DNA from: Hemiscyllium ocellatum
Taxonomy: Eukaryota
Length of the DNA: 64,000 nt
Assembly: GCF_020745735.1 (NCBI RefSeq)
Contig: NC_083409.1
Span: 6,995,534 to 7,059,533 of the forward strand
Direction: 5' to 3'
This document shows, one piece after another, positions 11,291 to 63,555 of the stretch. Each line of letters opens with the position of its first letter. The first letter of the stretch is position 1. Below the pieces are notes generated by a model, which worked only from the letters and a program-made list of their open reading frames with translations, did no database searches and had not been told where the DNA came from. The position numbers and the translations under genes were made by a program.

Positions 11291-11429
11291 CTGGAATCTG
11301 ACAGTGCAAGAGGAGGTCATTCAGCCTATTGTGTCTGTGAGTGACCCAAGTAGCCCTACTGCTCCTCTCTCTCCCCATAATCCAGCAAATCTTTCCTTTT
11401 CAGCTCGATCTTAATTCTCTCTTGTAGAC

Positions 11430-40769: not shown

Positions 40770-41075
40770 CTGTCATAAAATCCCTACAGTGAGGAAACAG
40801 GCCATTTGGCCCAACATGTCCACAATGACCCTTGTAAGAGTAATCAACCCAAGACCCAATCCCTTATCTTATTACTCTACTTTTCCCCTGACTAATGAGC
40901 CGAACCTATGCATCCCTGATCACTGTGGGCAACTTAGTATGGCCAACTCACCTAACCTGCACGTCTTTAGATTGTGGGAGGAAACCAGAGCACCCAGAGG
41001 AAACCTACATAGACACTTGGAGAATGTGCAAACTCCACATAGACAGTTGCCTGAGGCTGGTATTGAACCTGGGGC
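40770..41075 (-). mobile_element. HE1-like SINE
   Basis: Reverse-complement SINE body GGAGGAAACCAGAGCACCC..TGCAAACTCCAC. Confidence 0.8.
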
Positions 41076-44000
41076 AAAACACCCAGACCGGCCTTGACTT
41101 CGCTCCAACCTCTGCCTCCACTTCTGGCCCCTCCCATTCTGCAACCAACACTTAGACTACATTTCCCAGAGTCACCCTGAGTCCAACTGTCTACCTGCAG
41201 CCAGCCTGCCAGCACACTCGCTCTCCCTCCTCACCCATCCAACCCCACAACGCACCCTATTCCTCCACTTCTCCTTCTTCACCTCATCCGCACCTTCCCA
41301 TTCCCACACCTCACTCCACAACCCACCTCCGTTCTCTCCCACACCCATTCTCCCCCATTCTCATCACCCTTGCCCCCTCTCCTCCTTCAGCCATCTCGGA
41401 CCACCCTGAAAATCTCGTTCCCCCAACCCGAGCCTTGCCCCTTATTTGCTATCCCCTCACGACCTCGAACTCTCTGAGGCCAAAAAGTCCATCCTGAGAA
41501 AAGGGCTCACATTCATTCCCCACCACAAAAAATCCCGCACCCACCAGGATATGTAGCTCTTCTTCCGCCGACTCTACCTCCGTGTCTTCTTCTTGAACAA
41601 AAACTCCCAAACTCCCTCTGAGGACCCCTTCTCCCACCTCCAAACTTCATTGCTGACCACTGATGTGACATCAGCCGCCTCAATTTCTCCACCACCCCAC
41701 CCTCTCCAACCACCCCTCCTCCCAACGTGCAGCACTCCACTCTCTCTGTACCAACCCCCGGTTCACCATCAAACCCACTGACAAAGGTGGTAGTCTGGGG
41801 AACGGATCTCTATGTCCCAGAGGCCGAAACCCAACTGTCTGACACCATGTTCTACCTCCCCCTTGCCCATGACCCCACCGTGACCCATCAGGCCAAAATC
41901 ACTCACACTGTCAGTGCCCCCATTGCCTCCAGTGATCTCCCCTCCACTGTCTCCAATCTCATAGTCCCCAGCCCTCCAATGCCCAGTTCTCCCTGCTCTC
42001 CAAGATCAACAAACCCAACTAGACTGGCAGACACATCATCTCAACATGCTCCTGCCCCACCGAACTCCTCTCATCCTACATCAAATCCATCCTCTCCTCC
42101 TTGATTCAGGCACTTCCCACCTACATCCGTGACACCAAGCATGCCCTCCATCTGTTCAGTAACCTTCAGTTCCCAGGCCCCCAGCACTTTACCTTCACTA
42201 TGGACAGTCCTTATATACATCCATACCCAACAAGATCAGCCTCCTGGCCCTCTGCTTTTTTTCTCTCCAACAGATCCATTTACTCCCCCTCCACCAATAC
42301 CCTCCTCCATCTGACAGAACTGCTCCTACCCCTCAACAACTTTTCCTTTAACTCCTCCCAGTTCCTCTAAATCCAGGGATGGCTATGAGTACCTGGATGG
42401 GCCCCAGCTCCCCCTGCCCCTTTATTGGCTATGCTGAACAGTCCCTCTTCAGTGCCTACACAGGCACTGTGCCCCAGCTCTTCTACCATTACATTGATGG
42501 CTGCATTGGTGCAGTGACCTGCACCCAGGCTGAACTGGAGCAGTTCATCGTCTTCGCCCACAACTTCCACCATACCCTCAAATTCACTTGGTCCACTTCG
42601 GACACCTCCCTCCCCTTTATTGACCTTTCCATTCCCATCTCCGGTGACAGTGTTCAGATAGACATTTACTGCAAACTCACAGATTCCCATTATTACCCGG
42701 ACTATACTTTCTTACACCCATTTGCCTGCAAGACCTCCATCCCATTCTTCCAATTCCTCCGCCTCTGCTCTTTCTGCTCGGATGAGGAGACATTCCATTC
42801 CCAAGTATTCCATATGTCCACCTATTTCGAAAAATATACTTTTGCTCCCTCTGTCACCCCTCGCACAACCTCCATTTCCCATTCCACTGCTCTAAACCCA
42901 CACCCCTCCAAACAAAATAAAGACAGAGACCCCATTGTCCTCACCTTTCAACCAAACCAACCTCTATATCCAACACATCATCCTACTCCGCCAAGCCCAA
43001 CAAGATCCCACCACCAAGAATTTCTTCCTCAAGTTACCCCTGTCTGCCTTCCACAAGGACTGTTCCCTTTGACAATTCTTGGTTTGCGCCACTCGCTCTA
43101 CCATTTCTCCTGAACGCCCAGGTACCTTCCCCTGCAAACGGAAAGGATACAAAGCCTGCTGGTACACCAACCCCTGCACCTCTATCCAGGCCCCAAACAG
43201 TCCTTCCAGGTGAGACAGAGGTTCACCTGCCTCTCCTCCAACCTAATTTACTACCTCAGGTGCCCGCGATGTAGTCTTCTCTTCATTGGGAAAACCAAAT
43301 ATAAACCGAGGCAGCGGTTTGTCCTGCATCTCAGCTGGGCCTGTAGTGGCCGACCAGATCTCCTAGTCACCACCCATTTTAATTCCCCTTTCCACTCCCT
43401 TTACTCCGGGTTCAATTCCCGCCTCAGGCGACTGACTGTGTGGAGTTTTCACATTCTCCCCGTGTCTGCTTGGGTTTCCTCCGGGTGCTCCGGTTTCCTC
43501 CCACAGTCCAAAAATGTGCAGGTTAGGTGAATTGGCCATGCTAAATTGCCCATAGTGTTAGGCGAAGGGGTAAATGTAGGGGAATGGATCTGGGTGGGTT
43601 GCGCTTCAGCGGGTCAGTGTGGACTTGTTGGGCTGAAGGGCCTGTTATCATACTGTAAGTAATCTAATCTAATCTAATCAACATGACCATCCTTGGCCTC
43701 CTCCATTGCCACAATGAACCAAACCGCAAATTGGAGGAACAATAACTCATCTTCCGCCTGGGCAGCCTACAGCCCAGAGGATTCAACACTGTGTTCTCCA
43801 ATTTCAAATACTCTCCCTTCCCATCCCCTGACTCCCTCCCCAGCCCCTCCCATCTCTTCCACTCCTCTCTGCCACCAAACAGATTCATTCCTTCCATTGA
43901 CGAACCAGGTCGTGTCCTCTGCCTGTCGTCATCTATCCCCGTTCTCCACCCTGCCTCCGCCACCCCCTTTATCTGCAGCTCCGCCTGAACCCACCACCAT

Positions 44001-44087
44001 TCCTGAAGAAGGGTTACACCCAAAACATTAAATTCTTAACCGCCTGATGCTGCCTGGCTTGCTGTGTTCCTCCAACCTCCTGCCTGT
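41076..44087 (+). mobile_element. Near-complete degenerate Penelope-like element (RT + GIY-YIG) ending in a hammerhead-like terminal repeat
   Basis: KPTDKG, YIRDTKHAL, MGPS.., YIDGCIG, KFTWS..LPFIDL; GIY-YIG region NLIYYLRCPRCSLLFIGKT..RF..H; CTGAAGA core at 44003. Confidence 0.88.
43405..43678 (+). mobile_element. 5'-truncated HE1-like SINE inserted in the Penelope GIY-YIG domain
   Basis: GGGTTCAATTCCCGCCTCAGGCGACTG...(CTAAT)n tail; splits HFNSPFHS from NMTILGLLH. Confidence 0.88.
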
Positions 44088-46642
44088 CATTGAATGGAAC
44101 CAGCAGGAAAGGGCTGAACAATCAAGTGTCAGGGCCATCAACAAATGGGGATGTGACACACTACAGACAGATGCATTGTGACAGTCAATCACAAAGAGAA
44201 GCCCAAACTGGAAATGAAACACTAACGCACAGTGGACGGAATTCAATATCAGAATGTGTGAGATCATGCACTTTGTTCGGAATAATCAAAAGATTGACTC
44301 GTATTTAAATAGTGAGAGATTCCAACAAAGTGCAGTACAGAGTGATCTGGGTTGTATTGTGTATGGTATACTGAAAGTTAGTGCAGGTGCAGGAAGGAAT
44401 TGAGAAGGCGAATGGAATTTTCACCTTTATTGTCTGGGGTTGGAATTTAAAAGTAGAGAAATCTTCTTAAAACTTTATAGGATGTTAGTGAGCCGGCATT
44501 TGAAGTATTGTGTGCAATTTTGGTCCCTGTATTTAAGTAATTGGAGTCCTACATCTGCTTCAATTTCTCATGTTCTTGTGTGCTCCAGTGTCCTTCCCTC
44601 ACAGCAGAACTGGTTTGTCCCCTGCCTGCAGTAGCAGCCTCCAATCTCTGGGTGGTGCTGCCATATGATCTGCCTTGGCCAGGCTGTCACAATTCCCAAA
44701 TCACAACAATGCCTGGGCTTTGGAAGCATTGAATTGGCTGTAAAACATCTTCAAACATCCAAGCTCAAAAATGGCATAATAGAAATATAATTCTCTCTCC
44801 TTTTATGTTTTGTTTCCAAGCCTTCCCACCTGTCATCCAACAACATCGCACACTTGTGTAAAATCTAGAATGGACCATGAATCTCTGGGAGAACTTACTT
44901 TGTGACAACACTGGGTCTAATGACAACATCCTAAGTGGGCTTTGAGGGTGAAGGTCAATAGCAGTCTCATTGGGACTTGATCTGAATTGTCTCCAGTCAG
45001 TCAGTGCTTTTGTCTGGTCCACACAGTACTGACCAACCTTAGACCCCTGTAATCTGATTGAGATGAAGGGTGAGCTGTGCTGGATTTCACACATGCTCAC
45101 ACACATGGTGAAGCAGGGATTCCCCATTTCAGAAGAGTAAATGGAACGAACGAACTGGGTGGATGTGACATCTCCACCTGTCCCTAAGAGAGTGGGGACA
45201 GGAACAGTAATATTCTCACACAGAAAGATGGTAAAAATCTTAACCCACAGAGGGAGAGGAAATAGGAAAAGCAACGCTCCATAAAGACAGGGGACAGTAT
45301 CTGGCTGTTCCCCATTTTCTTGTTGTGTTGTGATCTTGCGAAATTGGTTTGGTTTATATTTTCTTAGTTGTATTTAGGTTTGATGAGGTGATTCATTAAC
45401 AAGGATTCCAATTGCATATTTCCTGTAGCAGCAGATCCATTGATGATCACATTTTCATTTGGAGTTTGCCCATGTTTCTGTCCAAGCTGATACAGCATGG
45501 TCTACCAGTGCTGCTCCTATTGGGCTAAACCATCACACACGAGGGAATCTGATGGACACTTTCTCCTTGTGTTGACAAAGGGAAAGATTTGGTTTTACTG
45601 CGATGGTGGCCAGAGAAATTAGTCAGTGGATGTAGTTCCAGCTGAGCAGAATGTTCTGATGTTCATGATGGGATTAACCTCGACAGTTCCCACTTCCCTT
45701 TACACCGACAGTGCGGCAGGAAGTCACCATGCAGTGGTCTCCTGGCTCACACTGAAAAACCAAGTTGATGGTATAACTGCAGAGAGCACGACAATGGCTT
45801 GAACTCACCGAACAACCAGAGGCTTCAACCAACAACTGGGTCACAGGCAAATGACATGTTGTATAAACTCTCAGTTTCTCGGAACATTCATTGACAAACA
45901 TAACTACAAAATGGAACAGGATATTGTTTATGAAAATGGGCATTGCAAAAATAAAATCCAAACACGTTATAGATAATCTATAAGACTACAGCATTTTCTT
46001 TGAAAACTGGACGATAATGAGATGAGAAATCAAACACCCATCCACTCAGTCACACGGTGTTGAAGATGCACTGTCCTCATCATAACAGGTTTGCAAGCAT
46101 CTGAATAACACGTAAGGGGAGAGAAACATTGCAAACTGTATTATCACGTGAGAGGATCCATTAAAACCTAGAACCATGATGTTAAATGCTCCCTACCATA
46201 AACAACACTGATGCATTCACATCATTGGAATGTTAAATGATTTAAATCTCAAGTGGCATTGATGATTTTTTTCCAAGTCCATAGCAAGGAAGCAGCAGCT
46301 GACATATGAACTCTAACAAAATGATAGCAGCCAGTGAATACAGAGCTGACTCCAGAGACAAAAAAAATCAACTGCCGAAATCTATACAGTGCTGGGAATA
46401 TTTTAGACAAAACAGTTTGTTGTCAGCAAGTTACTGCAGCTTGAAAACTGCAGTACGGTCAGAAAGAGAAAAAAGGACAAAGTGCAGATTGTTGAACAGG
46501 CCCCTACACCTGGGCCTGAGGCAGGAGCCCAAGCTCCAACGCACTGGCCTCACTTCACACCAATCTTCACACAGTGCGGGGTCATGAACTCCGGCCATTA
46601 ATCCCTCTGCACTGTCTCTCTATGGGTCTCTACAGATTGAGC

Positions 46643-46843
46643 TGAAAACGTGTTGCTGGTTAAAGCGCAGCAGGTCAGGCAGCATCCAAGGAACAGGAAA
46701 TTCGACGATTCCTGATGAAGGGCTTATGCCCGAAACGTCGTATTTCCTGTTCCTTGGATGCTGCCTGACCTGCTGCGCTTTAACCAGCAACACATTTTCA
46801 GCTCTGATCTCCAGCATCCCTGCAGACCTCAATTTTTACTCTT
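46643..46843. mobile_element. Penelope-derived fold-back element with 12-bp TSD
   Basis: About 63-bp near-perfect inverted arms; TACAGATTGAGC at 46631-46642 and 46844-46855; absent from the paralogous arm (about 55290-55550). Confidence 0.85.
46708..46743 (+). ncRNA. Minimal hammerhead-ribozyme-like motif (PLE type)
   Basis: CTGATGA-A-GGGC(TTAT)GCCC-GAAA-CGTC: conserved core, stem II and palindromic ACGT stem III. Confidence 0.55.
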
Positions 46844-46914
46844 TACAGATTGAGCCTGTTTGCTCCAAGCAGAGTCCCAGGTGATTTTTTTTCCTGATCA
46901 GGGACAATGAAGCA

Positions 46915-46928
46915 CTACCCTCTAGTGG
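46915..46928 (-). promoter_or_regulatory. CTCF-like site (CCACTAGAGGGTAG) facing cluster 1
   Basis: 13/14 match to the consensus CCASYAGRKGGCRS on the - strand; paralogous to the 55208 site. Confidence 0.5.
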
Positions 46929-49621
46929 TGAAAGGACGGTTGCTGAGGATTATGGGTAAAGTCCCCTTCCATTCGCGCCCACACAAATCAGCAGCCACTT
47001 CAGCTGCTTTATTGAAAACGACAAGCTTCAAGGCGCTGTTCTTTCAACGGTGGAACTGGACACAAGATCAAATGAGTTAATGGCAGAAGAAGGAGATTCA
47101 TCCTCTCGAGCCTGCGCCCCATGGCTGACCTGATTATTCCACATTCTTGCCTTACTCTGATAGACATTTGAAAGCAATGATTGTCTACATCACTACAAGC
47201 ATTCTGAGGTTTCATTTCTATGTTTGATGAAGAGTTCCAACGATCTATGACATTATTCAAGAAAAAAAACCTGCTTATCTCGGTCTTCAATGAGGGAACT
47301 TGTTTTAATTTGTGATTCTCTCCAAAAAGGAAGCTTTCTTTTCACATCGACGCTGTATTCTATGTTCAAGTTGATATGACATCTGGTTTAATCAGCTACT
47401 CTGTTATGGGAACAGCTGCCTATCCTGCCACCTTCAGTGACTGATGCAGATAGACTTCCAGGTCCTACTGCCCCTACACCCATCCATACTTGCACCCTTT
47501 AGATTGTTTTGTCTCTCCACGTTTTCCTTCCAAAATGGATCAGTGACATGTCTTTCCATTAAGTTGTTTCTGCAGCCATCTGCTCATTCCATTAACTTAT
47601 CGGCATCCTTTTTGAAGTTAGACACTATCTTCTTCATCTGCTGAAATACATCCAAGTTTCATACCATCAGCAAATTTTGAAATTATGCCTTGTTCACTCA
47701 GGTTAACATAGATTAAATATTTTAAATAACTTTTAAAAAATGAACTATTTTATAAACTATTGTAAATCAAACCTCAAATTAATTGCCCATTTCTAGTTAC
47801 TCGGACTGAGTTCTGAGCCAGATTAGGGGACCGTTAAGAATGAATCTTGTCACTGTGTGACTGGAATCATAGACCGGGTGATGACTGGGTTCCCTTGTCC
47901 AAACTACATTCAGGAACATGACATTGAGTTTCATAGTTTTTTTGTTCAGATCCCAACGCCTTCCTTCCCAGTTATTACATGGCTCACCATGGCCCTCTCC
48001 AGGACAATTAGGAAAGGGCATCAAATAGCAGCCATTTTTGTGCCCGCCCATCCCAGGAGAAATCAAAATCAATGAGATACTCTTCAAATAATCAAACTGG
48101 TGAGGCTTGAATTCATCTCTTTGGAAGACTGGAGCCTAGGCTGGAAATAGAGCCATGACATGGGTGAATCTGATTTGTCAGACTGAAAGGTGGAGTATCC
48201 TTCGGACTGACACTGGGATCAGATACAAAATGAATTACACTCAAAGACCGAACACATGACTATCAAAGCGGGTCACCAAACTGCAAAGAGCAGCAATTTA
48301 TCTGGGAGACCTCAACAGGTATCAGTGGGTGTAAGAGCATTAGGCCGGCAAGTGTCAGATAATGTTGAACACACCAGAAGCACAGTCACACAGAAAGGAA
48401 AGCAATTGGGATAGAGCAGGGAAATGGGAATAACTGAATTTCTCCACTGAGAGCTGGAAGAGGTTTTCTCCGTTGTAACTCCTCTGAGAATGATAAAGTT
48501 TGAAGGGCCGTTTATTTTATAAACAGCACTGCAGCGCGGAAGAAAGGATGTCGAGTGACATATCTCCTTTAACTTGGAGACAGTATCAGAAATAAAGGTC
48601 AATGCGATTTTAGATTGAATATTGAGAGTGAGGAGATGGAGGGGAGAGTGACCATGGCAACTGTCCTGAAGAATGGTTCGGTCATGGCGAGAATGGTGCA
48701 CAGTTAGGGGCTGCTTTGAGGGACAATACATAATGGGACATGGACAGGGGATCTAGGGTCACAAGAGATGTGCAGGCTAGCAAATGGAAAATACCATGGA
48801 AAATGCACGATAACGGAAATAGGATGGGTGGGATGGCCTTCAAAGGGTCGGTATTGGCTGGCTGGGCTGTGTGGCCTGCTCCACTCTGTAGGAATTCCTT
48901 GATTCTGTGATTCTAAGAAGACCAGAACAGGATTTCGAAAGTGGAGGGAGGGTATTCTGATGTTCAAAAATTCTAAAACAAATGAACACAGTAAATGTAG
49001 ATTTACTCTCAGCGCAGACAAACTGAAAGGCAAAATGACATATTCTCCAGTCATATACAAGGTACAGAAAAGAGATCAGCAAAAAACATTTTGATGTAGT
49101 TATTGGAATTGAATGATGAATAACGGTAAACAGAGTGCTCCATCCAAAAAAAGACAGAATTGCTTTTTAGAATTTCAACAGGCCTGAAGCAAAAGAGGAA
49201 TTCAGGATCAAATAGTCACTTGAGAATATAGTACTTGAGTGAGACAAAACCCTTCTTGTGAAAGCATTTCATTTTGCCTTGCTTTCTCTCCATGGATGCT
49301 GTCTGACCAGCTGGGATCTCCATTTATTTACTGCGTTATTTCTTACAAATTGTCTTGTTGTGTGCAAGACAAAAGCTTTGACAAAATGTCTTTTTTTCAG
49401 CAACACTTGAATTTGGATCAGATTGGAGAGAAAGCAGGGCCATGGAATAATCTTTCCTTGCAGGGATGGAGGGAGTGTGTGTGTGTAGAATCTCCCATGG
49501 GCATGGTTCTCCTAGCTGCCACCACATCAGGAAGGCTGGAGCTTGATGATCGAGCTGAATGGACAGGGCTCACTCTCACATTCCTCAGGGCCATGGAGCC
49601 TCTTGTGATGGGAGCATCTGC

Positions 49622-50495
49622 TTGGTGTTAGGGCAGACAATGACATTGCAGTGGGATTGGAAATGGGACAACTCGACATTGGATGCTGCACAATGGCTGC
49701 ACTGACTCTTCTTCTCTGCCTGATCCCTCCCCACACACAGGAGAAGTTGGATTAGGAAACTGTTCTAAAGGGCTACAACCCACTGCAGCACTCCCAACCT
49801 GCAAAAAGAAGAACAATTCTACAAAGACTTTGCCAAGAACAGATATTCCCGCAACTTCATCCACAGATGCATAACAGACAAACATGCCACGACCTAACAC
49901 ACTAGCCACGCTACCTTATATAAAAACATCACAGAACTCCAACCACTCACAAACTGCCCAGAAACTGACAGCCACGCTCAAACAACCCACGAGAACAAAA
50001 GGCCCAATACCCACCATGTGAAAGACAGATGTGGTTTACAAGAATCCATGCAACGTTTGCACGAAACACCTCGGACAAACAGCCAGACAACTAGCCATCC
50101 ACATCCATGAACACCAACGAGCCACTAAACCACATGAGCAGCTGTCCCTAGTAACTATACACACAGATGACAAGGACCACAAATTCGATTGTGTCAACAC
50201 TATGATCATAGGACAAGCTCAACAAAGGGCAGCCAGAGAATTTCTAGAGGCATGACACTTATCCATGAGCTCCATCAATAAGCACATTGACCTAGACCCA
50301 GTATACCGACCACTGCAATGAACATCAGGAACCAGTAACTTGAAACAGCAGGAATGAAACCAAATAAATTCCAGAAGACACAGCACAACAGCACTTCACA
50401 GGAAGCTCCAAAGCTCTGAAGGTGTCACCTCGACAGGGGACAAAATGTTTATAAATCAACTTCCCAGCTCGGTGAGCATACCCACAACTACAGCA
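49622..50495 (+). mobile_element. Penelope-like 3' fragment (second family), GIY-YIG endonuclease
   Basis: VVYKNPCNVCTKHLGQTARQLAIHIHEHQRATK..HKFD..AREFLEA. Confidence 0.88.
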
Positions 50496-51059
50496 AGAAT
50501 GGAGGATTTTCCTGTCCTACGTTGCTCTCCAAACCCTTACGTGCCATCTTCATAGTCAGATCTTCATGCCCCTCACTACACATGGAATTGGACTGCCTGG
50601 TCCTGAGCCTTATAACATCCTTCTGGAATAAAGTCTCCAGGTATCTCTGCACCTCCCTGCTGTGCCACTAATACTTTCAACGTAGCCTCCAATCCAAACG
50701 CCCCGTGTGGGAGTTGTTGTAGATTTATCCATTCACTTCAGATGTATTTAACCTGAGTCACTTTAACTCAAAAAAGAAATGTTGATCTCATTTACAAATG
50801 AAAGATATCCATTCCTCTATTAAACCAGTAATTGTCTTTAGTTTCTGAATTAAGTTTTAGTGCTTTCCATTTATTGACCTTCCCGAATGGGGGTGTCCCG
50901 AAGCAGTACAAGACGAGATGAGGATATAGATGGGCTGGAGGGTCAGATGGGCTGATCAGTAACAAGTGGAATTTATTGAGATACATGTGAGTCAGTGGAC
51001 TGAGCTCTCCCTGACCATACAAGTGAGTTGAGGGCAGAGTGACAGCAATTGACATCAAG

Positions 51060-51500
51060 ACCACTTTGATGGTGTGTGGCATCAAGGAGCCCGAGCAATG
51101 CAACAGCTTTTCACCTCCTATTCCAGGGAAGGGATCAACATCTGGATCCCTCTGAGCAAGTCCTGGGAATTCTGTCATCCCAAATGGATACGTCCTCCTC
51201 CTCAGTTCCCACAAACAGCAGCAAGTCAGTCACACATTGTCCAAACCCTTTCGGGGAGCTGACCTGAACTCTCACAGCCCTGTGCCATGCTCTGCTGGAA
51301 GATGGAGGGACGATTGGGGAGCCCTTGGCACAAACAACTCCATCAATATTGTTGGTCTTTAAACGTGAAGGTGAACTTGTCCTGATCCTCAGCCTTCCCT
51401 GACCCGATATGGACCAGAACACGTTCAAAATGACCAACTGTGTGAAGACCCACCGCCAGTCTGACAGCAATGAGCGATTCAGCTCTGAACACTCCATCAG
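51060..51500 (-). mobile_element. Degenerate retroviral-type reverse transcriptase fragment
   Basis: FTQLVILNVFWSI / EDQDKFTFTFKDQQY*WSCLCQGLPNRPSIFQQ / QCVTDLLLF in shifting frames; matches the decayed LDxxNxFWSI, LPQG and YVDDLL motifs. Confidence 0.7.
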
Positions 51501-51688
51501 TGAGCTCACTCCATTATGTTCAGATACACTGCCATTGAGTACCCAGGGATCACATCCCTCCACTCCAGGGTTTTGATAGCCCTCCCATCACAGAGTCCCC
51601 CGTGAACCCCTTCGGTTCGTTCTCCACTGGAGGGGGCTGATCCCAGTGGTTTTGATGGATGCATCTGTGTGTGAGATGTAATTATGTT

Positions 51689-51696
51689 TGTGTGTG

Positions 51697-51726
<30 letters not shown>
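51689..51726. repeat. Compound (TG)n(TA)11(CA)n microsatellite
   Basis: Direct reading. Confidence 0.9.
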
Positions 51727-51727
<1 letters not shown>

Positions 51728-52205
51728 TCAATATCTTCCCTGTTCTCCACCCACACACCCATGGACTCGGGCTCTTCCCCTTTCATCGTACAGCATCAGT
51801 CACACGTATTCAGTTCACCCTTCAGAGCACCACCATGGTGGATGGGGGGTTATGGAATGAAAGGTACCCTACCCACTCTGGATTTGAATCTTCCCCATCT
51901 ACACTCTGAGTTCAGCTCAATCTCAGCATCATTCTTCAATCTTTCTGAACTCCAACATACCTTCCTTTTCTTCCCCAGTTATTGGGGATGATTTTCTCAG
52001 GACCCTGCATTCCTGCTGAAAGTGGAATTCTGTCCCTCACTGTAGTATTACCCTCCTGCTCCCGGAACCCCATTTCCCTTTCTATTCTCCCCTCGTGTTC
52101 CGTGCCTTGAGGGTGGAGGTTAACACTTCACACACCCTTTCCTGAGGCTTCAGCTCGGGCCCATTTCCAAAGCACACACGAGACAGAGACTGAATCTTCT
52201 TTATC

Positions 52206-52211
52206 TTTATT
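52206..52211 (-). terminator. Polyadenylation signal retained by the C relic
   Basis: TTTATT on + (AATAAA on -) at the position homologous to 38878. Confidence 0.55.
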
Positions 52212-52502
52212 CCCTTTTCCATAATGACATTGACAGAAACAGGCTGCAATTAACAGCCCAGGCAGAGGAAGCTGCACAAATTCATATCTACAATGTAGCT
52301 TGAGGAAAACACGTGTGGAGATTTTCTCAATAACATGAGAATCCTGTCCCTTTAAACAGTGAGAAAACCTTAAGTTGGAACTGGTGGCTGAGCAGGAAGG
52401 AGATCTGGTTTACTGAAGCAGAGACTTCTTAGGTTCACATTGTTTTTATACAGCAGACAGTTTTCAATATCTTTGAAAGGTTATGCTTGTTATTATAACT
52501 CA

Positions 52503-52710
52503 ACACTGTCCCCAACAAACAGTCTCCTGGACAGGGACAGAATAGGGTTAGCTCCAGAGTAAAGCTCTTTCCGTACTGTTCCCATCAAAGACACGGAGGT
52601 CAGGGGCAGGATAAGAAACAGAATAAAGCTGTCTCCACACTGTCCTCGTCAAACACTCCCAGGACAGGGACAGCACTGGTTGGGTACAGAGTGAAGCTCT
52701 CTTTACAGTG
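52503..52710. repeat. Three units of a roughly 65-bp shark tandem repeat in the C-relic 3' UTR
   Basis: ACACTGTCCCCATCAAACACTCCCAGGACAGGGACAGCA..GGTTAGATACAGAGTAAAGCT-like units. Confidence 0.75.
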
Positions 52711-52870
52711 TCACAGTAACCTGCCTTAACCCCTGAACCTCAGAGTCTCCCATAGGCCAGTCTCAAGAAGGAAGAGTGTTGAAATTCAGTGCTGATAATG
52801 ACCTTTGTCCTGCCAGCTCAGCCCTGTTCTATTTAAAGTTATGACTCCTCTGTGGACTGTCTCAAAAACT

Positions 52871-52959
52871 CTACACACATTCTGATCTCCTGATGCTCTT
52901 GCTGAGGGAAGAGGGGAGGGTCACGTGGGTGAGGGAACAGGAGAAGTGAGAGTTGGACT
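52871..52959 (-). pseudogene. IGKC: Ig kappa C relic: last 29 codons only; 5' exon part and splice acceptor deleted
   Basis: Encodes SNSHFSCSLTHVTLPSSLSKSIRRSECV*, then a paralogous 3' UTR (about 52160-52870). The 5' side is fused directly to sequence homologous to the intron about 70 bp upstream of the C acceptor. Confidence 0.92.
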
Positions 52960-53439
52960 GGCAGAAGTATCAATTTGAATATTTGTATCGAATACCTAAC
53001 AAACCCAATGTTTTTTAAATTCCTTTTTGATTGTGGACATTGATGACTCCCACCCAGAGTACATTCTGTGCCCTCATTACCCTCAGAGCTTCCGCCAAGT
53101 GCTGTTCAACATGGAGGAGAGACTGACTCATCAGTCAAGGGCGGACAAAACATGGACATCAGCCAGAAGTTTCAGAGAATCAGAGAATCATAGAGTGAAG
53201 AAGAGCTCCCTCATCTGATCATGTCGGTCCCACCCAGGCAAAACTAAATCTACTCTCCATCTATTTTCCAGAACTGGGCCCAAAGCATTCAATGTTCGGA
53301 TATTTCAGGTGCCCATCCAGGTATTTTTAAAAGGTATATTTGTTATATATTGACCGGGACACCATGGGGATCTGCTCTGCTCGTCTAATAGTGTCATGGC
53401 ATCTTCTACTGCCCACTGAGAGGGCAGATATCAGAGCAT

Positions 53440-53800
53440 CCCATCTGAAAGATAGTCTCTGAGCACTGAACCTCTGATAGTGTTGCACTCCCATAGTATT
53501 GTTACACCAGCAGTGCAGCACTCCCTCAGCATGAACTATCTGATAGTGCAACACTCCCACGGTATTGACTTTCTGACAGTGCGGCATTCCCTCAGTACGA
53601 ACCCTCTGACAGTGCGGCACTGTCTCAGTACTGATCTTCTGACAGTGCAGCACTCCCTCAGTACACACCCTCTGACAGTACTGCACTCCCTGAGTACTGA
53701 CCCATCATGAGTGCAACACTCCCTCAGTACTGACCTTCCAATAGTGTTGCACTCTCTCAGTGCTATTCTTCTGACAGTGCTGCACTCCCTCAGCGCTGCA
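53440..53800. repeat. 33-bp CAGTACTG minisatellite, about 10 units
   Basis: TCTGACAGTGCGGCACTCCCTCAGTACTGACCC-like units. Confidence 0.88.
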
Positions 53801-54607
53801 CTGCACTCTCAGCCCGGTTAATTTGCTTCAGTGTTAGAATCATGTAATTATGGAATCCGTACAATTTTGAAGCAGGCCATTCACTCCAATGAGTTCACAC
53901 CAATCCTCCGAAGAACATCCCACCCAGATCCAAACCACTGCACTATCCACTTGCTCCCTACCTGACTGGTGCATACTTATCAAAGACATGCAGTCGTTAT
54001 TCCTTGAATAAGCTCCACATTTCAGTTGTGCCCATCCCCTGCAGTTTCCTTCCCCATCCTATTCATCCTAAATCTTGCCTAATCTCATCATAGTAGCCTT
54101 TCCTCCACCAATAACCTTTGCCCTGCAGTATATATCTATCTCTTTCCATTGCTCTGGTAAACAAAACCAAATTGTGGTCACGATCATCAAAGTGCTCACC
54201 TACCTGCAAATCTAATAGCTGGCCAGTTTCATTAACCAGCACCAAACCCAACGTGGCATTCCCATTCTGAGAAGGAAGGTGCTGGGATGAGTACAAACAA
54301 AAACCATGAAACTCAATGCCATGTTCACAAATGTTCTTTAGGCAAGGGATCCCAGTCATCAGCCGGTCTGTGACTCCAGTCCCACAATGACACAATTCAT
54401 TCTTAACGGCCCTATGACCATCCTCAGCAAAGACCTCAGTCTGATAAGCTGGAGACGGCAATAAATATGAGGCTTGTCAATGACATTAATGCCCTGATAA
54501 TGAATAATGCTGCTATTTGCAGTCTGCCTTTTAGCCTCGGGTCCACCACTTTCCCTGTTATGGGTCTCTAATCCTCTCACATTAATTCATTAGGTGATGG
54601 CAATATG

Positions 54608-54828
54608 TGGGCGGCACGGTGGCACAGTATTCAATTCCCACCTCAGGCTACTCTCTGTATGGAGTTTGCACATTCTTCCCGTGTCTGCGTGGGTTTCCTC
54701 GAGGTGCTCTGGTTTCCTCCCACAATCCAAAAATGTGCAGGTTAGGTGAGCTGGCCATGCTAAATTGCCCGTAGTGTTAGGCGTGGATTTGTTGGGCCGA
54801 AGAGCCTGTTTCCACACTGTAAGTAACC
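54608..54828 (+). mobile_element. Internally deleted HE1-like SINE
   Basis: GTGGGCGGCACGGTGGCACAG..GGAGTTTGCACATTCTTCCCGTGTCTGCG..GGGCCGAAG..TTTCCACACTGTAAG. Confidence 0.85.
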
Positions 54829-55207
54829 TAAAAAGAAATGCGTTGAGCTTTTACTTTGAACTGTCAGGTCTCTTTTCTCTTGCTCTCTCCTCCCACCTCC
54901 TTCCAAGCCTTTCACCAGATGTTTCCCATGACAGCCTCGCTGTGCAGAGCGAAAGCTCTCTGTGTTTTCTGAGGCCTCGCTCTGCCTTGTGTCTGTCCAT
55001 CTCCAATTTTCATTTACTCAGGAAGGTAAGGGTTACAGAATTTAGTAGTAATATGTTCCAGGTCAGCCATGGCCTGATTGACTGACTGGGGAACCAGGCT
55101 GAAACAACCAAAAAATCATTCCCACTGGAATGGCTGCTGTTTCGTTCAGATGCTCATGGCCTGGGACTTGACGTCTGGTTCTCAGCAGCGGTACCAGCAC
55201 TCTATAG

Positions 55208-55221
55208 CCACTAGAGGGCAG
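55208..55221 (+). promoter_or_regulatory. CTCF site (CCACTAGAGGGCAG) facing cluster 2
   Basis: 14/14 match to the consensus CCASYAGRKGGCRS. Confidence 0.65.
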
Positions 55222-58200
55222 CTGTTTCACTGTCCCTGAACAGAACAAATGAACTGGGACCCTGCTCGGGTCGAACCAGTTCAATCTGGGGAAATGACGG
55301 GAGAGAGAGAGAGGGGAAAAGCTTCTGAACCAGGATATTTATCCCATCCCAATGAAATGTCCTCTTTGATATGATTGTCTTCAAAGTGTATTTTTTTATT
55401 CATTCTCTGATACACGTAGACAATGTCAGGACTGAGTGGGACAAAGTTTATTTCCTCCTCTAATCCCTTTCCAACACAGCATCTCCATCTTGCTTTACTC
55501 CTTATTGACTCTTCTACAATTGTCTCTGTTCCCTCAATCTGTCCTGGTCCCAGAGGGATTGATGGCCGGAATTCATGACCCCGCACTATGTGAAGGTTGG
55601 TGTGAAGTGAGGCCAGTGTGTTGGAGCTTGGGCTCCTGCCTCAGGCCCAGGTTTAGGGTCCTGTTCAACAATGTACATAGTGTTTTGGTTTTTCTTTCTG
55701 ATCACAGACATTTTAATTCTGCTTAACAAACTAGTGATGGAAATATGTCAGTGCTGGGATCATTTAACATCTTGGTCCTAGTTGTTAATGGACCCTCACG
55801 CATGATCATACAGTTTTCAATGTTTCTCTCCCCTTACGTGTTACGAAGAGCTTTGCAAACATGTTTTGATGAGGACAGTGCATCTTCAACACCGTGTGAC
55901 AGAGTGGGTGGTTGTAGGAATTCTCATCCCACTCCGTCCAGCTTTCAAGGAAAGTTCCCTCCACTGACTCATATCTTTGGCCGCCATTGCAGCAAAAGCA
56001 AATCCCTCCCTTTGCCCGCACAAAGGCAAAATGCCTGTCAGATTCTATTGTGTGTGATGGTTTAGTCCAATAGGAACACTACTGGTAGATCATGCTGTAT
56101 CAGCATGAACAGAAACCTGGGCAACCTCCAAATGAAAGCATGACCTTCAGTAGATGTGCTGCCACACGAAACGTGGAATTGGAATTATTGTTACAAATTA
56201 CCTCATCAAAGCCAAATAAAACTGAGAAAATATAAACCAGACTAACTTCCCAAGGTCCTTCATCAGAACACAACAAGAAATTGGTTAACAGACAGTTACT
56301 GTCTCCTGTCTCTGTAGAGTGTCACTGTAACTGCCCCCTCTCTCTCTCAGGGGAGTGTAGTTGTTCCTCTCCCCTCCCTCTTTGGGGAAATGCTATTTTG
56401 AGCATCCTTTTTGTCTGAGGATGAGACTGTTCCTGTCCCCCAACTCTCTCAGCATCAGGGAGGGGCTTGAAAGCCACCCGGTTTGTTTATTCCAATTACT
56501 TTCTTGTGAAATGGGTTCCCTGCTTCACTATACTGACCCGTGTGTCAATACACGGCACAGCTCACACTCCATCTCAGCCAGATCACAGGGTCTAAGTTGG
56601 TCAGGACTGTCTGGCCCCAGAACAATAACACTGACTGACTGGAGACAACCCAGATCAAGTCCCAATGAGAGTGTTATTCACCTTCACACTCAAAGCCCAC
56701 CAAGAAGGTGGTCATCAGTCTTAAATGTTGTCGCAGTGTAATGTCTCCCAGAGAAGTAGGAGTCAGTCCAGATTTTAAACAAGGAGGGGCTGTTGTGAGG
56801 AGACAGATGGGAATGCATAGAGAGGAAACAATAGGAGAGAGAATTGTATTTCTGTTACGCCATTCATGAGCTCATGATGTTCAGTGCTGTTTACAGTCAA
56901 TGGAATACTTCTGATATGGAGACAATATTGTAATGTGGGGAATGCATCAGCCCATTTACTGTCAGCAGGCTACCACATTAACAGGGAGCTATTGAACAGG
57001 ACATTGGGGCTAGGACACGGAGCAGAGAATGGAAGAGGCTGGAAAATAAAACCCAAGCAGCCAGTGAAGCTTGAGTATTGGGCTGGGTACGAGGGAGAGA
57101 TGGCAAAGCATAGGGGCTTCTTAAAATTCATTCATGAGATGTGGGCATCACTGGCTTTGCCGGCATTTTATACCCATTTCTAGCTGCCCTGTGAAAGTGG
57201 TGGTGCACTGCCTTCTTGAACTGCTGCAGTCCATGTACTGTAGGAAGAAACACAATGCTCTTTGGGAGGGAATTCCAGAATTTATTTCCCAGTGACAGTG
57301 AAGGAATAATGATGTATTTCCAAGTCAGGGTGGTGAGTGACCTGAAGGGGTAGTTTCAGGGTGTGCTGTCCCCATATGACAGTTGCTCCTATCCTTCGAG
57401 ATGGAACAATTGGTGGGTTTGGAAGATGCTTCCTTAAGGAAGCTTGGTAAGCTGGTGGTGATGGTATAGCTGGCTGAAAATGAACGCCTCTCCACAGCCA
57501 GTGGTCACTCCCTTTCCTTTTATATCAATGAAAACAGTCAACAAATACCTCCTGGTCTGTAATAACAAAATAACAATTTCTATTGATAAAACATCTTTAA
57601 TGTAGGAACCATCCAAAAGTTGGGAACATATGGTGTTTTTGTTGATGACCAGAAGCAGACAAAGAGCTCGTTATAAGAAGTGAGAGGGGTTTGTGGAGGA
57701 AATTCCTGTACTGAGGGCCTGGGAGACTGAAGACACAGATGCCAATCATGACGGGGAAGGCCAGATTGGAGAGTTTGGGAGATGGGGAGGGATTGAGGAT
57801 AACAGAGTGTTCCATTGCATCGCCTCCCCACTTGCAGCAGCAGGAGACTGGGGAGAGGAATCGGGAGGCTGGGCAAGGCACCACCCAGCGGCTGGAGTCT
57901 GCTACTGCAGGCAGGCTTCAAACCAGTTCTGCTGTGAGGGAATGACACTGGAGCAAACAAGACCATGAGAAATAGTAGAAGGAAGTGGACTCAAATGCCA
58001 GCCCATCCTTTCTTATATACAGAGACCAAAAGTGCACACAGTACTCCATGTGCAGGATCACTAACATCAAATAGTCACAGGGCAAAGTGGGGAAACTTTA
58101 ACAAACATTAAGAATGTTTCTCTATTTTAACATTCAAACCCCTAACAATAAAAGCCTCAATTCCATTCACCTTCTCAAAGACTTGATGCACCTGCACTAG

Positions 58201-58649
58201 CTTTTTGTGTTTCATGCATAAAAACACTCAGACCCCTCTGCACTGCACTTTGTTAGAATCTCTCTCCATTTAAATAATAATCTGTATTTTGATTATGCCT
58301 ACTGAAGTGCATGACCTTCCACTCTTTGTCTTTAAACTCCATCTGCTGCGTAATAGCGTTACCTTTCTAGTTTGGTCCTCTCTGTGTGATTGTCCGTCTC
58401 TGTATATCTGCCTGTTCCATGTCACATTCCCATTTGCTTACAGCCGAGAGACTTGGTTGTCCAGCCCTTTTCTGCTGGTTCCATTCAATATTGATCAGCT
58501 TCCTCGAGACAACGTAGCCCAGCATGTCATCCCCTCCTTCAATCGGGATTTTCCTTGCTGTCCTCTGATGGCACATTCGAGGCTCGGAGAGTTACTTCAT
58601 GACTCGCTCCCAGACTCTGTGACAGATGGAGGTGATGGGAACAGAGAAA

Positions 58650-58960
58650 GATCCAGGCTCTGTGACTGGGGAGTGAGGGAGAGATACAGGTTCGAGACTC
58701 CGAGACTGGGGAGTGAGGGGGAGACCCAGTCACAGGCTCTGTGACTGGGGATGAGGAGGAGACCTAGGCCCAGGCTCCATGACTGGGGAGTGAGGGGGAG
58801 ACCTAGGCCGAAGCTCCGTGACTGGGGAGTGAGGGGTAGACTCAGGCCCAGGTTCTGTGACTGGGGAGTGAGGGGGAGACACAGGGCTCAGGCTAGTGAC
58901 TGGGGAGTGAGGAGGAGACTCCAGGCCCAGGCTCCGTGACTGGGGAGTGAGGGGGAGACT
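58650..58960 (+). repeat. G-rich 38-40-bp minisatellite, 8 units
   Basis: GTGACTGGGGAGTGAGGGGGAGAC..AGGCCCAGGCTCC units with GACT starting at 58664, 58704, 58743, 58781, 58820, 58859, 58898 and 58938. Confidence 0.92.
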
Positions 58961-60402
58961 GTTGGATGATGGTGAGCTTGAGAGACAAGTGACACTCAGC
59001 ATGTGACCACCTTCAATGACTTTTGAAATTAGTTCCAGGGCAAGATTTAGGGCTCATCTAGAAGACTGGCTGTGTGACAACAGGATTCCCCTCACTGCAT
59101 ACACCATACTGTCAAAGTTCAACATCATTCCCAAATCTCTGGCACAGGCCTTGAAACTTCATAATTCTGGTTGGAAGCTGAGAGCCTAGACTCATCATGC
59201 TGTGTACCCCAACAGAAAGGCCTGTGTGTGATCAGTTATACTGCATGGTGTGCGCACTGATTGGGTGCCCAGGAGCTGGGCAATTGAATGCAGCTTCATT
59301 GCCAGAGCAAGATGTGCTTCCTCCCATCTCACCTCCTCCAGCGGCCTGAAATTGGGAAAGAGTGTCCAGATGTCCGATCATATTATCCGGAAGCTTGGAG
59401 GTCAGCCAAGTGAATCTAACAGAATATGAATTCCCTGATTAGGTCGGATAATCTGATCCAGTCAGGGAGACATGGCTGACAGAAATAAACAGAGTCAGAA
59501 GTCACATGACACCAGGTTATAGTCCAACTGATTTTTTGAAATTATTCACTTGACTAAGGAGCAGCAATCTGAAAGCTTCTGATTTCAAGTACACGTGTTG
59601 GACTATAACCTGGTGTCGTGTGAATTTTGACTTTGTCCACCCCAGTCCAACACTGACACTTTACATCAGAAAGAAACAGGAATGTCAGACATCCCGTTTG
59701 CTCTGAGAGCTGTCTCGGAAGGAACTGGATCAGTGTCAAGGACCCTCCACACAACGGGATACTGGCCCCTGTGCAGTTGTTGCAGTAACAGTGGGACCCA
59801 CACTGACAGACACACACCTACAGACAGCATTGAATGACAGTCACACCCACACTGACCACATGCCGACAGATAGTTTTGGGTAACAGACACACTTATATAG
59901 GGGCATGTCTGCTGTGAGATCCTGACTGATCCTTTCTCTGAATTAAGATTTCCCTCAGTTCAGTTTTGAGCTGTCACTGTGAGGAAAAGGGTCAGGTGGG
60001 AGAAGTGAACGTCACGACTCCAGTGTCCAGCATCTGTGACTGACCTAAGTTCGTTTCAGGTGTTACCCAGCAGCAGCAGAGATGGAACAGTGCGATATCA
60101 CGAGCTGGGTCTGGACAAACAAAGTAAAGAGGAAATGCCTCAGATTGTAATGATTTAGCCCCAGCAGCTTTCAGTTTCTGTTCTGTTTGGAATCATGTAA
60201 ACTCAATAGATTCCCCAACAAAGGGTTCATTTGGAAATGATTGATGATTGGCTGTCAGTCCAAATTTCAGCCAATGTGTCATTCATTGACAGGCCAAGCA
60301 GCCAATCATGACAATCATTTTGCTGAAATTCTGCCAATCTCGTGAGGGGGTGGTGGAACAATTCCAAAGCACTCACAAGTCAGAGACTTAATCTTTTTCA
60401 TC

Positions 60403-60408
60403 TATATT
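60403..60408 (-). terminator. Variant polyadenylation signal AATATA of C2
   Basis: Position homologous to the C1 AATAAA, with a single substitution. Confidence 0.5.
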
Positions 60409-60932
60409 CCCTTTTCCCAGGTTGACATCAACAGCAAAAACTGTAATTAACAGCCCAAACAGAGGAAGTTGTACACGTTCACAATCACAATGGAGTTTGA
60501 GGAAAACACTTGTGGAGCTTTTCTCAATAACATGAGAATCCTATCTCTTTAAACAGTGACAAAACCTGAAATTGGAACTAGTGGCTGAGCAGGAAGGAGA
60601 CTTGGTTTACTGAAGCACAGACTTCTGAGGTTTACCTTGTTTTGTACAGCTGACAGATTTCAGCAACTTCAAGTGATTTTACTTGGCATCACAAGTAAAT
60701 CCTGTCCCTATCAAACACTCACTGCACAAGTTCAGCGAGGGTTAGATACCGAGTAAAGCTCGTTCTCCATGGTACCAATGAACTGGCGTGAGCCCTGAAC
60801 TTCAGAAGTGTCTCTGAGCCAGTCCCGAGAAGGAAGAGAGTTCAAATTCAGTGCGGACAATGACCTTTGACAGTCCAACTCAGCCCTGTTCTATTTAAAG
60901 TTGTTTCTCCTCTGTGGACTATGTCAAACACT

Positions 60933-61261
60933 CTAAACACATTCTGATCTCGTGATGCTCTTGCTGAGATGGGAGGGGAGGGTCACATGGGTGAGGGCAC
61001 AGGAGAAGCGAACGTTGGACTCCCAGTCAGACCAAGAGAGTGTCAGCAGGCTGCTGACACTGTAGGTGCTGTCCAAAGCTCGAAGGTAGTTGCTGGTCTG
61101 AACCCCGTCCGAAATGACTGCACCGTCCTTCTTCCACTGCACCTCCAGCTCATCGGGATAGAAGGGATTGGCAAGGCACACCATGGTGGCAGTGCCCTTG
61201 GCATTGACCTGCTCCGGGAAGGGAGGCAGCAGGGTCAGCTTGGGCTGAGAGTTCTCACAGC
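60933..61261 (-). CDS. IGKC: Ig kappa constant exon C2 of a second, oppositely oriented cluster (VJ not in window; functional status uncertain)
   Basis: Same acceptor and same 329-nt length, open frame (S)CENSQPKLTLLPPFPEQ...SKSITRSECV*; 22 nt differences from C1 by hand count. Confidence 0.93.
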
Positions 61262-61509
61262 CTGAAAGACAAGAGAAACAATTTTAATCCCTGCCATTCA
61301 GCAGGATTTTAACTCTCCAAACATTAACTAGCAGAACTATCAGTTTGAACATTTGTATCTAATACAGAACATACCTAACAAAAGAATGGACGTTTATTAA
61401 AATTCATTTTGCCGGTGCAGTTTGAAGTCCCCCACCCAGTGTACATCCTGTGTTCAACGTGGCCGAGAGACTGATTCATCAGCCGAGGGAGAACAGCACA
61501 TGGTAAACT

Positions 61510-62700: not shown

Positions 62701-63310
62701 CCCAAAATGGAGATTCATTCGACCTTCAGAATTTTCTCCAATTGTATCCCTATTGCTGATGAGACACCCACTGGTTTCCTTGTCCATGTCTGGCCTGATG
62801 CCATGTGACTTCATCATGCCTGGAGTCAATGTTGAGGATTTCCAGGGTCACTCCCTCCTGGCTCTATATCACTGTGCCATCACCTCTGCTGGGTCTTTCC
62901 TGCTGGTGGGAGAGTACATATACAGGGATGGCGATGGTGGTGCCTGGGACACTCTTCGGTATAATCATGTAAATATTATTGTGTCAGGCTGTTGTGTGTC
63001 AGTCTAGTCTGTGAGACAGCTCTCCTGAATTTGACAGTAGCCCGCAGATGTTAGTAAGGAGGATGTAACAGGGTCGACAGGGCTGTGTTTGATGTTGCTT
63101 CTGGTGCCAAGGTCGATGCCAGGTTGTCCATCAAGTTTCATTCTGTTTCTGAGACTTCCCAGCGATTGTTAGAATGGAAGGACTTGCTCGGCCATTACAG
63201 AGGGTGGTTAACAGTTAACCTCATTGCTGTGGGTCTGGAGTCACGAGTAGGCCAGACAAGGTAAGGATGGCAAATTTCCTTCCCGAAAGGACATCGATCT
63301 TTCGTCTCAA

Positions 63311-63555
63311 AATCTCTTCAACAAACACCCGATCACTCACAGATCAGAACGACTTTATCAGAGAACACTGGAGAGACTTGAATCAATGCACTTTAGGAAG
63401 GAGTCACATTGGGTGCCTGTGTAGAAGGTTTTAGATTTTATTTCAAACCTTGCTGCCCAGCTCTGGACTGAGGTCAAGGGTGAGACTTCAATGAGTCTCA
63501 TTGTCCCAGGGTCAGACAAGGTCATTACTCCTCATGACCTCCTTACCCCTGGAAG
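63311..63555 (+). pseudogene. Paralogous antisense exon relic in the C2 intron
   Basis: NLFNKHPITHRSERLYQRTLERLESMHFRKESHWVPV*KVLDFISNLAAQLWTEVKGETSMSLIVPGSDKVITPHDLLTPG; stop at 63422, donor mutated GT to CT. Confidence 0.55.

What the first reader, a model, noticed from the sequence alone, without database searches (positions are those of the whole stretch)
46915..55221. Divergent CTCF pair: a possible insulator making each Ig minigene its own loop domain
Each arm ends in a paralogous CTCF-like motif: CCACTAGAGGGTAG on - at 46915-46928 (13/14 consensus) and CCACTAGAGGGCAG on + at 55208-55221 (14/14). The inversion makes them point away from each other, each toward its own C/VJ, which is the established geometry of a loop-extrusion boundary and parallels mammalian 3' CBEs. 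Inference: a built-in 3' CTCF site could explain why shark clusters rearrange and activate autonomously. The C relic is left isolated between the two sites.
Basis: partly seen in the sequence, partly recalled or inferred. Interest (0 to 1): 0.75.

Follow-up and report, generated by a model that had tools for sequence, protein, structure and literature searches.

The report
Duplicated CTCF-type site behind shark kappa genes
Two strong binding motifs for the genome-folding protein CTCF lie back to back between two shark antibody light-chain genes. They are two copies of one older site, carried on a mirror-image duplication, so a boundary role is plausible but nobody has tested whether CTCF binds here.

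Summary
CCACTAGAGGGTAG (46915-46928, -) and CCACTAGAGGGCAG (55208-55221, +) are the two best CTCF matrix matches in the 64 kb window. A match as good as the best one appears in only 2.3% of shuffled windows.

The two sites are not independent. They sit at matching positions in a tail-to-tail inverted duplication of two kappa-type (NS4/type III-like) clusters. The outward-facing geometry therefore follows from copying one ancestral site that faced its own V. The sites lie about 1 kb inside the inner arm ends, not at them. They are 8.6 kb and 5.7 kb 3' of the C exons.

Between the arms, 13/14 identity is ordinary: 24% of aligned 14-mers do as well. Across species the picture differs. A related shark holds 5 of 9 sampled 31-mers from the 131-bp motif block, but only about 1 of 54 from its flanks. 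Those words are multi-copy there, so constraint and copy number cannot be separated.

No convergent 5' partner exists. One bamboo-shark kappa cluster lacks any such site.

The scan has already found this arrangement on other DNA of this genome (s1-191592, s1-203492, s1-213650, s1-203520).

Verdict: probably a real 3' CTCF-type element, analogous to the mouse Ig-kappa 3' CBEs. The insulator role is untested.

The parts
55205..55223 (+). Right CTCF-type motif. The core at 55208-55221 matches the consensus 14/14. It faces the right cluster's C exon, 5.7 kb away.
   Evidence: (19.96 bits, best in the window).
46913..46931 (-). Left CTCF-type motif. The core at 46915-46928 has T instead of C at matrix position 15. 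It faces the left cluster's C exon, 8.6 kb away.
   Evidence: 17.81 bits, second best in the window.
55140..55290 (+). Right motif block of about 150 bp. It is an island of arm homology, and its exact 31-mers recur in related shark species.
   Evidence: organism B holds 5/9 sampled words of 55150-55280 against about 1/54 outside.
46846..47000 (-). Left motif block, the diverged paralogue of the right block (77% identity over 84 aligned columns).
35599..47971 (+). Left arm of the inverted duplication: the J-C intron end, the C exon and the 3' flank of the left kappa cluster.
   Evidence: About 4.06 kb is still alignable, at 77% identity.
54267..63647 (-). Right arm of the inverted duplication: the 3' flank, the C exon and the J-C intron end of the right kappa cluster.
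38005..38352 (+). Left C-kappa exon. The coordinates are those of the stop-to-stop reading frame that contains it.
   Evidence: Pfam C1-set, E = 2e-22.
60936..61283 (-). Right C-kappa exon. The coordinates are those of the stop-to-stop reading frame that contains it.
   Evidence: Pfam C1-set, E = 1.6e-19.
52162..53327 (-). C relic in the central spacer: a piece of intron, the last ~86 nt of a C exon and ~800 nt of 3' flank. Most of the exon is missing.
   Evidence: It matches 60359-61021 and 61451-61666 directly, and 38267-38922 in inverted orientation.
26011..26466 (+). Germline-joined, in-frame VJ exon of the left cluster. It ends ...[23 protein letters not shown] and is followed by a GT splice donor.
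   Evidence: 86% identical to a Chiloscyllium punctatum kappa chain.
35464..35482 (-). Weaker CTCF-like motif in the left J-C intron, in the same orientation as the 3' site.
   Evidence: 16.85 bits. One search shows its similarity to the site at 63721-63739.
63721..63739 (+). Weaker CTCF-like motif in the right J-C intron, probably the paralogue of 35464-35482.
   Evidence: (15.87 bits).

Best explanation
One ancestral CTCF-type binding site lay in a block of about 150 bp, several kb 3' of a kappa-type (NS4/type III-like) light-chain C exon, and faced upstream toward C and V. A tail-to-tail inverted duplication of the cluster copied it. The two copies therefore now sit about 8.3 kb apart, pointing away from each other, each toward its own gene.

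The right copy is canonical. The left copy has a C-to-T change at an informative core position and lies in a more diverged block.

Inferred, not shown: at least the right copy binds CTCF and stalls cohesin arriving from its own cluster. That would make it a 3' anchor or boundary that keeps the cluster's promoter and enhancer contacts on its own side, as the V-facing CBEs 3' of mouse C-kappa do.
For: - Exact motifs at the stated places.
- They are the best and second-best MA0139.1 scores in the window.
- A score of 19.9 bits or more appears in only 2.3% of shuffled windows, and there is a single exact IUPAC match.
- The positions are paralogous and collinear in the inverted duplication.
- Position 3' of C and orientation toward V match the mouse rsCBE and rpiaCBE.
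- A CTCF orientation code, with divergent sites at boundaries, was shown in a cartilaginous fish using the same matrix.
- The motif block holds nearly all the exact 31-mers that a related species shares with this 661-bp neighbourhood: 5/9 against about 1/54, Fisher p = 1e-4.
- A paralogous 304-nt contig of the source species spans the block and its flanks, so the block belongs to a larger duplicated unit rather than a short mobile element.
- The block is not in a high-copy repeat bin.
- It has no Rfam, Pfam or protein relative that would explain it otherwise.
Against: - There are no occupancy, accessibility or contact data.
- This is one independent event, so the orientation toward V is a 50% chance outcome.
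- 13/14 identity between the arms is ordinary: 24% of aligned 14-mers reach it.
- The words shared across species also appear in runs of only 56-160 million letters. They are therefore multi-copy there, and copy number is confounded with constraint.
- There is no convergent partner upstream of V.
- A compact C. punctatum kappa cluster has no CTCF match of 11 bits or more in 24 kb.
- The left cluster needs no rearrangement.
Confidence: 0.55

Rival explanations
1. Neutral motif. A chance CTCF-like 14-mer in old intergenic DNA was duplicated with everything else. It binds nothing and does nothing.
For: - It is one independent event.
- Conservation between the arms is no better than in the flanks.
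- The left copy already carries a damaging C-to-T change.
- L001 lacks any such site.
Against: - The score is very high (zero-order p about 1e-7).
- The block is the only part of the 661-bp neighbourhood whose exact words recur in three other species labels.
- Earlier notes of this scan report the same arrangement at other kappa clusters. I did not verify those notes.
Confidence: 0.22
2. Repeat-borne site. The block is a fragment of a moderately repeated, perhaps transposon-derived, family that carries a CTCF-like motif, as SINE B2 does in mouse. Its recurrence across species would then reflect copy number, and its position behind kappa genes would be incidental.
For: - Runs of only 56-160 million letters from other species hold the block's words, which implies on the order of a hundred or more exact copies.
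- The block is a short island between stretches that do not align between the arms.
- Mobile elements surround it: a MITE-like hairpin at 46639-46804 and a SINE-like repeat at 54630-54783.
Against: - The two copies are collinear with the rest of the arms, so the block predates the duplication.
- A paralogous contig extends well beyond the block on both sides, covering 55105-55397.
- The bin's laid depth is like that of its neighbours and thousands of times below the true repeats.
- There is no third copy in this window or in 49 kb of bamboo-shark kappa loci.
- Kappa clusters are themselves a family of about 50 or more copies in nurse shark (PMC2193156), which could account for the copy number.
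Confidence: 0.13
3. A different regulatory element. The conserved block is a 3' enhancer or other factor-binding module, and the CTCF-like core is only part of it. The right copy has an overlapping CAGCTG E-box.
For: - About 130 bp appears to be conserved, more than a 19-bp site needs.
- A CAGCTG E-box abuts the right core at 55219-55224.
Against: - The E-box is absent from the left copy.
- No other strong composite motif was identified.
- The CTCF core is the longest identical run in the block between the arms.
Confidence: 0.1

Closest known systems
Mouse and human Ig-kappa 3' CTCF-binding elements (rsCBE just downstream of dE-kappa/RS, and rpiaCBE), bioRxiv 10.64898/2026.04.12.717890
   Same: They lie 3' of C-kappa, and their motifs are oriented toward the V domain. 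They are proposed to confine enhancer contacts and insulate the neighbouring gene.
   Different: The mouse elements bound one 3-Mb translocon locus. Occupancy has been shown, and deletions give phenotypes. Here the site sits behind a roughly 12-kb mini-cluster with V and J already joined. It has been duplicated with the cluster, and nothing has been tested.
Igh 3' CBE super-anchor, and the Cer/Sis elements of Igk
   Same: They are CTCF sites that end cohesin-driven RAG scanning and delimit a recombination domain (my own knowledge, plus the titles and abstracts listed).
   Different: Those are arrays of several sites that work with convergent V-associated sites over megabases. No convergent partner is present here, and no recombination is needed in the left cluster.
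Divergent CTCF sites at TAD boundaries in little skate (PMC10115646)
   Same: It is a cartilaginous fish, the same matrix was used, motifs are oriented toward domain interiors, and divergent pairs sit at insulation minima.
   Different: Those are boundaries of domains of about 800 kb, defined by Hi-C and ATAC-seq in fin tissue. Here the scale is about 10-20 kb, and the pair arose by duplication.
The same arrangement elsewhere in this genome (scan notes s1-191592, s1-203492, s1-213650, s1-203520)
   Same: They describe back-to-back CTCF-type motifs between oppositely oriented kappa clusters. One follow-up also explains them as two copies of one site on an inverted duplication. Another places the element 3' of about a third of the kappa C exons.
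   Different: They concern other DNA. The notes are unchecked AI reports, and I could not retrieve their sequences for comparison.

Membership tests
Vertebrate CTCF-binding site | A strong match to the CTCF core matrix (JASPAR MA0139.1). | tested here: met
   The scores are 19.96 and 17.81 bits, ranks 1 and 2 in the window. A score of 19.9 bits or more appears in 2.3% of shuffles. There is one exact IUPAC match.
Vertebrate CTCF-binding site | CTCF occupancy in vivo (ChIP-seq or CUT&RUN) or in vitro (EMSA). | not testable with these tools
   No shark CTCF binding data could be reached. The runs found carry no library description.
Vertebrate CTCF-binding site | Sequence conservation above the flanks. 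| tested here: inconclusive
   Between the arms it is not met: 24% of aligned 14-mers reach 13/14. Across species, the block holds 5/9 shared words against about 1/54 in the flanks, p = 1e-4. That result is confounded by copy number.
Loop-extrusion boundary (divergent CTCF pair) | Two sites pointing away from each other. | tested here: met
   The site at 46915-46928 is on - and the site at 55208-55221 is on +. This geometry follows automatically from the inverted duplication.
Loop-extrusion boundary (divergent CTCF pair) | A convergent partner site closing each domain. | tested here: not met
   The best + strand hit upstream of the left V is 13.6 bits, at 11643-11661. Shuffles give 1.7 such hits per window. 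Two N gaps (23773-23941 and 25527-25758) were left unread. The far side of the right cluster is off the window.
Loop-extrusion boundary (divergent CTCF pair) | An insulation minimum or cohesin accumulation at the site. | not testable with these tools
   This needs Micro-C/Hi-C and RAD21 profiling in shark cells.
Antigen-receptor 3' CBE | Located 3' of the constant region, with the motif facing the V segments. | tested here: met
   The sites are 8.6 kb and 5.7 kb 3' of the C exons, and both are antisense to their gene. This compares with the mouse elements described.
Antigen-receptor 3' CBE | Present as a regular part of the locus or cluster unit. | tested here: inconclusive
Both arms have it. 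A paralogous contig covers the block. L001, a more distant C. punctatum kappa cluster, has none. Other assemblies returned no DNA.

The most novel reading that the evidence does not exclude
A V-facing CTCF anchor is a conserved part of the repeat unit of kappa light-chain clusters in carpet sharks. It would give each mini-locus its own extrusion domain. That would provide a physical basis for cluster-by-cluster activation and exclusion, and it would push the antigen-receptor 3' CBE design back to the base of jawed vertebrates.
Probability: 0.25. Interest if true: 0.7.

Novelty: new member of a known kind. Interest (0 to 1): 0.42.

Why it matters
How sharks switch on and rearrange one of dozens of near-identical Ig clusters independently of the others is an old open question. 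A conserved cluster-facing CTCF site behind each cluster would be a concrete, testable device for that independence. It would also link shark mini-loci to the loop-extrusion logic worked out for mouse Igh and Igk.

This window adds three things:
- a clean case in which the back-to-back geometry is shown to be a by-product of duplication;
- a natural C-to-T variant for binding tests;
- a first hint that the motif block recurs across species while its flanks do not.

I found no paper on CTCF in shark Ig clusters. The scan itself, however, has already reported the same arrangement elsewhere in this genome.

Tried and rejected
- **Fetching 3' flanks of other kappa clusters.** I searched with kappa proteins and looked up their genomic loci. 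The Hemiscyllium ocellatum, new Chiloscyllium punctatum and Scyliorhinus torazame assemblies returned no DNA because the files are too large. Two look-ups failed on queueing. Only the 2018 C. punctatum assembly gave DNA. L001 is a full cluster with no CTCF hit. L002 and L003 hold only the V region and do not reach C.
- **C-domain protein search.** It found only three short hits, two of them mislabelled as bacterial.
- **Using the 91-aa reading frame across the right motif as a proxy for a DNA search.** No relatives were found, and it has no Pfam family.
- **Searching earlier findings.** The search by sequence was blank.
- **Laying reads at 80% likeness.** I used only the contig positions and the coarse contrast with true repeats.
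- **Rfam.** Nothing lies at either block. There were only sub-threshold miRNA-like hits, on a TG-rich simple repeat and on a MITE hairpin.
- **Rejected idea.** The left motif cannot belong to the C relic, because its strand fits the left cluster and not the minus-strand relic.
- **N runs.** They were left as they are.
Full report
**Observation.** CCACTAGAGGGTAG lies on the minus strand at 46915-46928, and CCACTAGAGGGCAG lies on the plus strand at 55208-55221. I scored every position of both strands with the JASPAR MA0139.1 CTCF matrix. The two sites are the best and second-best matches in the whole window: 19.96 bits at 55205-55223 and 17.81 bits at 46913-46931. In 300 dinucleotide-preserving shuffles, a hit of 19.9 bits or more appeared in 2.3% of windows, and two hits of 17.8 bits or more in 1%. 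The degenerate core CCASYAGRKGGCRS has a single exact match, the right site. At one mismatch there are three matches, against 0.83 expected.

**Context.** The window holds two kappa-type light-chain clusters lying tail to tail.
- The left cluster is on the plus strand. Its VJ exon is germline-joined and in frame, ends ...[23 protein letters not shown], and is followed by a GT donor at about 26.47 kb. Its C exon is at 38005-38352 (Pfam C1-set).
- The right cluster is on the minus strand, with its C exon at 60936-61283. Its VJ lies beyond the window end.
- The closest proteins are kappa chains of Chiloscyllium punctatum (86% identity), Hemiscyllium and nurse shark. The family is therefore the NS4/type III kappa of carpet sharks. 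In nurse shark this family has about 50 clusters, roughly 10% of them germline-joined (PMC2193156).

**The duplication.** The two clusters are arms of an old inverted duplication, about 35599-47971 against 63647-54267. About 4.06 kb is still alignable, at 77% identity. The segments are collinear and are interrupted by independent insertions. The spacer of about 6.3 kb carries a truncated third C copy on the minus strand at 52162-53327.

**The sites are one event.** The motifs fall in a collinear aligned segment, 46846-46928 against 55288-55208. They are therefore two copies of one ancestral site. Arm homology resumes about 1 kb further inward, at 47768-47971 against 54476-54267. The motifs are thus inside the arms, not at their ends.

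The outward-facing geometry follows automatically from copying, tail to tail, a site that faced its own gene. The only non-trivial feature is that the ancestral site faced upstream toward C and V, and for a single event that is an even chance.

A second, weaker pair of CTCF-like motifs sits about 2.5 kb upstream of each C exon in the J-C intron, in the same orientation: 35464-35482 (-) at 16.9 bits and 63721-63739 (+) at 15.9 bits. The two are clearly similar to each other around the core.

**Conservation between the arms.** Identity of 13/14 is unremarkable, because 24% of all aligned 14-mers in the arms do as well. The one difference, C to T at matrix position 15, hits an informative position (C 733 and T 67 of 909 in the matrix). 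The left block has diverged to 77% identity.

**Conservation across species.** The result here is different. Runs labelled organism B hold about 10% of 63 sampled 31-mers from 54900-55560. They hold 5 of 9 from the 131 bp centred on the motif, 55150-55280. So about 5 of the 6 shared words lie in the block (Fisher p = 1e-4). Organisms C and D hold 2-3 of the 9. The source species, organism A, holds half to two thirds of the words both inside and outside the block.

There is a caveat. Runs of only 56-160 million letters hold the same words, so these words are multi-copy in those genomes. Copy number and constraint cannot be fully separated.

Three points argue against a short dispersed repeat:
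- the two copies are collinear with the arms;
- a 304-nt paralogous contig of the source species spans 55105-55397, well beyond the block;
- the laid depth of the block's bin resembles its neighbours and is thousands of times lower than the real repeats at 54500-54899 and 53500-53699.

Nothing else explains the block. It has no Rfam family. The reading frame across it has no Pfam family and no protein relatives.

**Tests of the loop-domain idea.** There is no convergent partner. The best plus-strand hit upstream of the left V is 13.6 bits at 11643-11661, and shuffles give 1.7 such hits per window. The two N gaps were not read. The only other full kappa cluster I could fetch is L001, from the 2018 C. 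punctatum assembly. Its C is 78% identical and its gene is compact, at 4.4 kb. It has no CTCF match of 11 bits or more anywhere in 24 kb, and it shares only the first ~530 bp of 3' flank with this window. The element is therefore not universal among kappa clusters. Chromosome-level shark assemblies returned no DNA, so I could not run the genome-wide positional test.

**Comparison with what is known.**
- In little skate, CTCF motifs scored with the same matrix are enriched at TAD boundaries. They are oriented toward domain interiors and are divergent at insulation minima (PMC10115646).
- In mouse Ig-kappa, two CBEs 3' of C-kappa (rsCBE and rpiaCBE) face the V domain. They confine enhancer contacts and insulate the neighbouring Rpia gene (bioRxiv 10.64898/2026.04.12.717890).
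- The shark site has the same position and orientation on a miniature scale. A full-text search found no paper on CTCF in shark Ig clusters.
- The scan has already reported the same arrangement on other DNA of this genome. Note s1-203492 explains it as two copies of one site on an inverted duplication. Note s1-191592 describes a conserved element 3' of about a third of kappa C exons. Notes s1-213650 and s1-203520 are related. These are leads that I could not verify.

**Verdict.**
- It is shown that the two sites are paralogous, strong CTCF-type motifs that face their own clusters.
- It is likely, at about 0.6, that at least the right one binds CTCF.
- It is plausible, at about 0.3, that it acts as a per-cluster 3' boundary.
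- The finding is a new member of a known kind, of moderate interest, and it needs occupancy and contact data.

Noticed in passing
window 35464-35482 (-) and 63721-63739 (+): A second, weaker pair of CTCF-like motifs (16.9 and 15.9 bits) lies about 2.5 kb upstream of each C exon in the J-C intron. Both have the same V-facing orientation as the 3' sites. A further single site at 36638-36656 (+), 14.5 bits, has no partner in the right arm.
   Followed up: partly
window 2316-13921 and 14541-23311: A large tandem direct duplication (78-87% identity, about 9-11 kb per copy) lies upstream of the left VJ exon. None of the long reading frames I tested in it has a Pfam family.
   Followed up: partly
window 46639-46804; relatives at 39236-39425 and 28581-28782: A MITE-like perfect hairpin (73-nt arms, 96% complementary, 20-nt loop) lies about 100 bp from the left motif. 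It has only a sub-threshold Rfam mir-2007 hit.
   Followed up: partly
window 54630-54783; copies at 43411-43564, 40921-41078, 22686-22837 and 8627-8798: A very high-copy SINE-like repeat lies about 450 bp from the right motif. It is the deepest bin in all four laid runs, from three species labels.
   Followed up: partly
window 53456-53800 and 63806-64000: A minisatellite-like tandem array is present in the spacer and again at the window end. It is very high-copy in the laid runs.
   Followed up: no
P0121, P0122, P0110: Shark-like Ig light-chain fragments (74-81% identical to this window's V or C) are filed in public databases as Aeromonas veronii and Salmonella enterica proteins, on contigs of 299-990 bp. 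This is most likely vertebrate DNA contaminating bacterial assemblies.
   Followed up: no
L001 (C. punctatum BEZZ01000502.1:639326-663753): This is a compact 4.4-kb kappa cluster whose C is 78% identical to this window's. It has no CTCF-type motif of 11 bits or more in 24 kb, which suggests that kappa subfamilies differ in whether they carry the 3' element.
   Followed up: partly
window 55219-55224: A CAGCTG E-box overlaps the 3' edge of the right CTCF core. It is absent from the left copy, which reads TAGTGC there.
   Followed up: no
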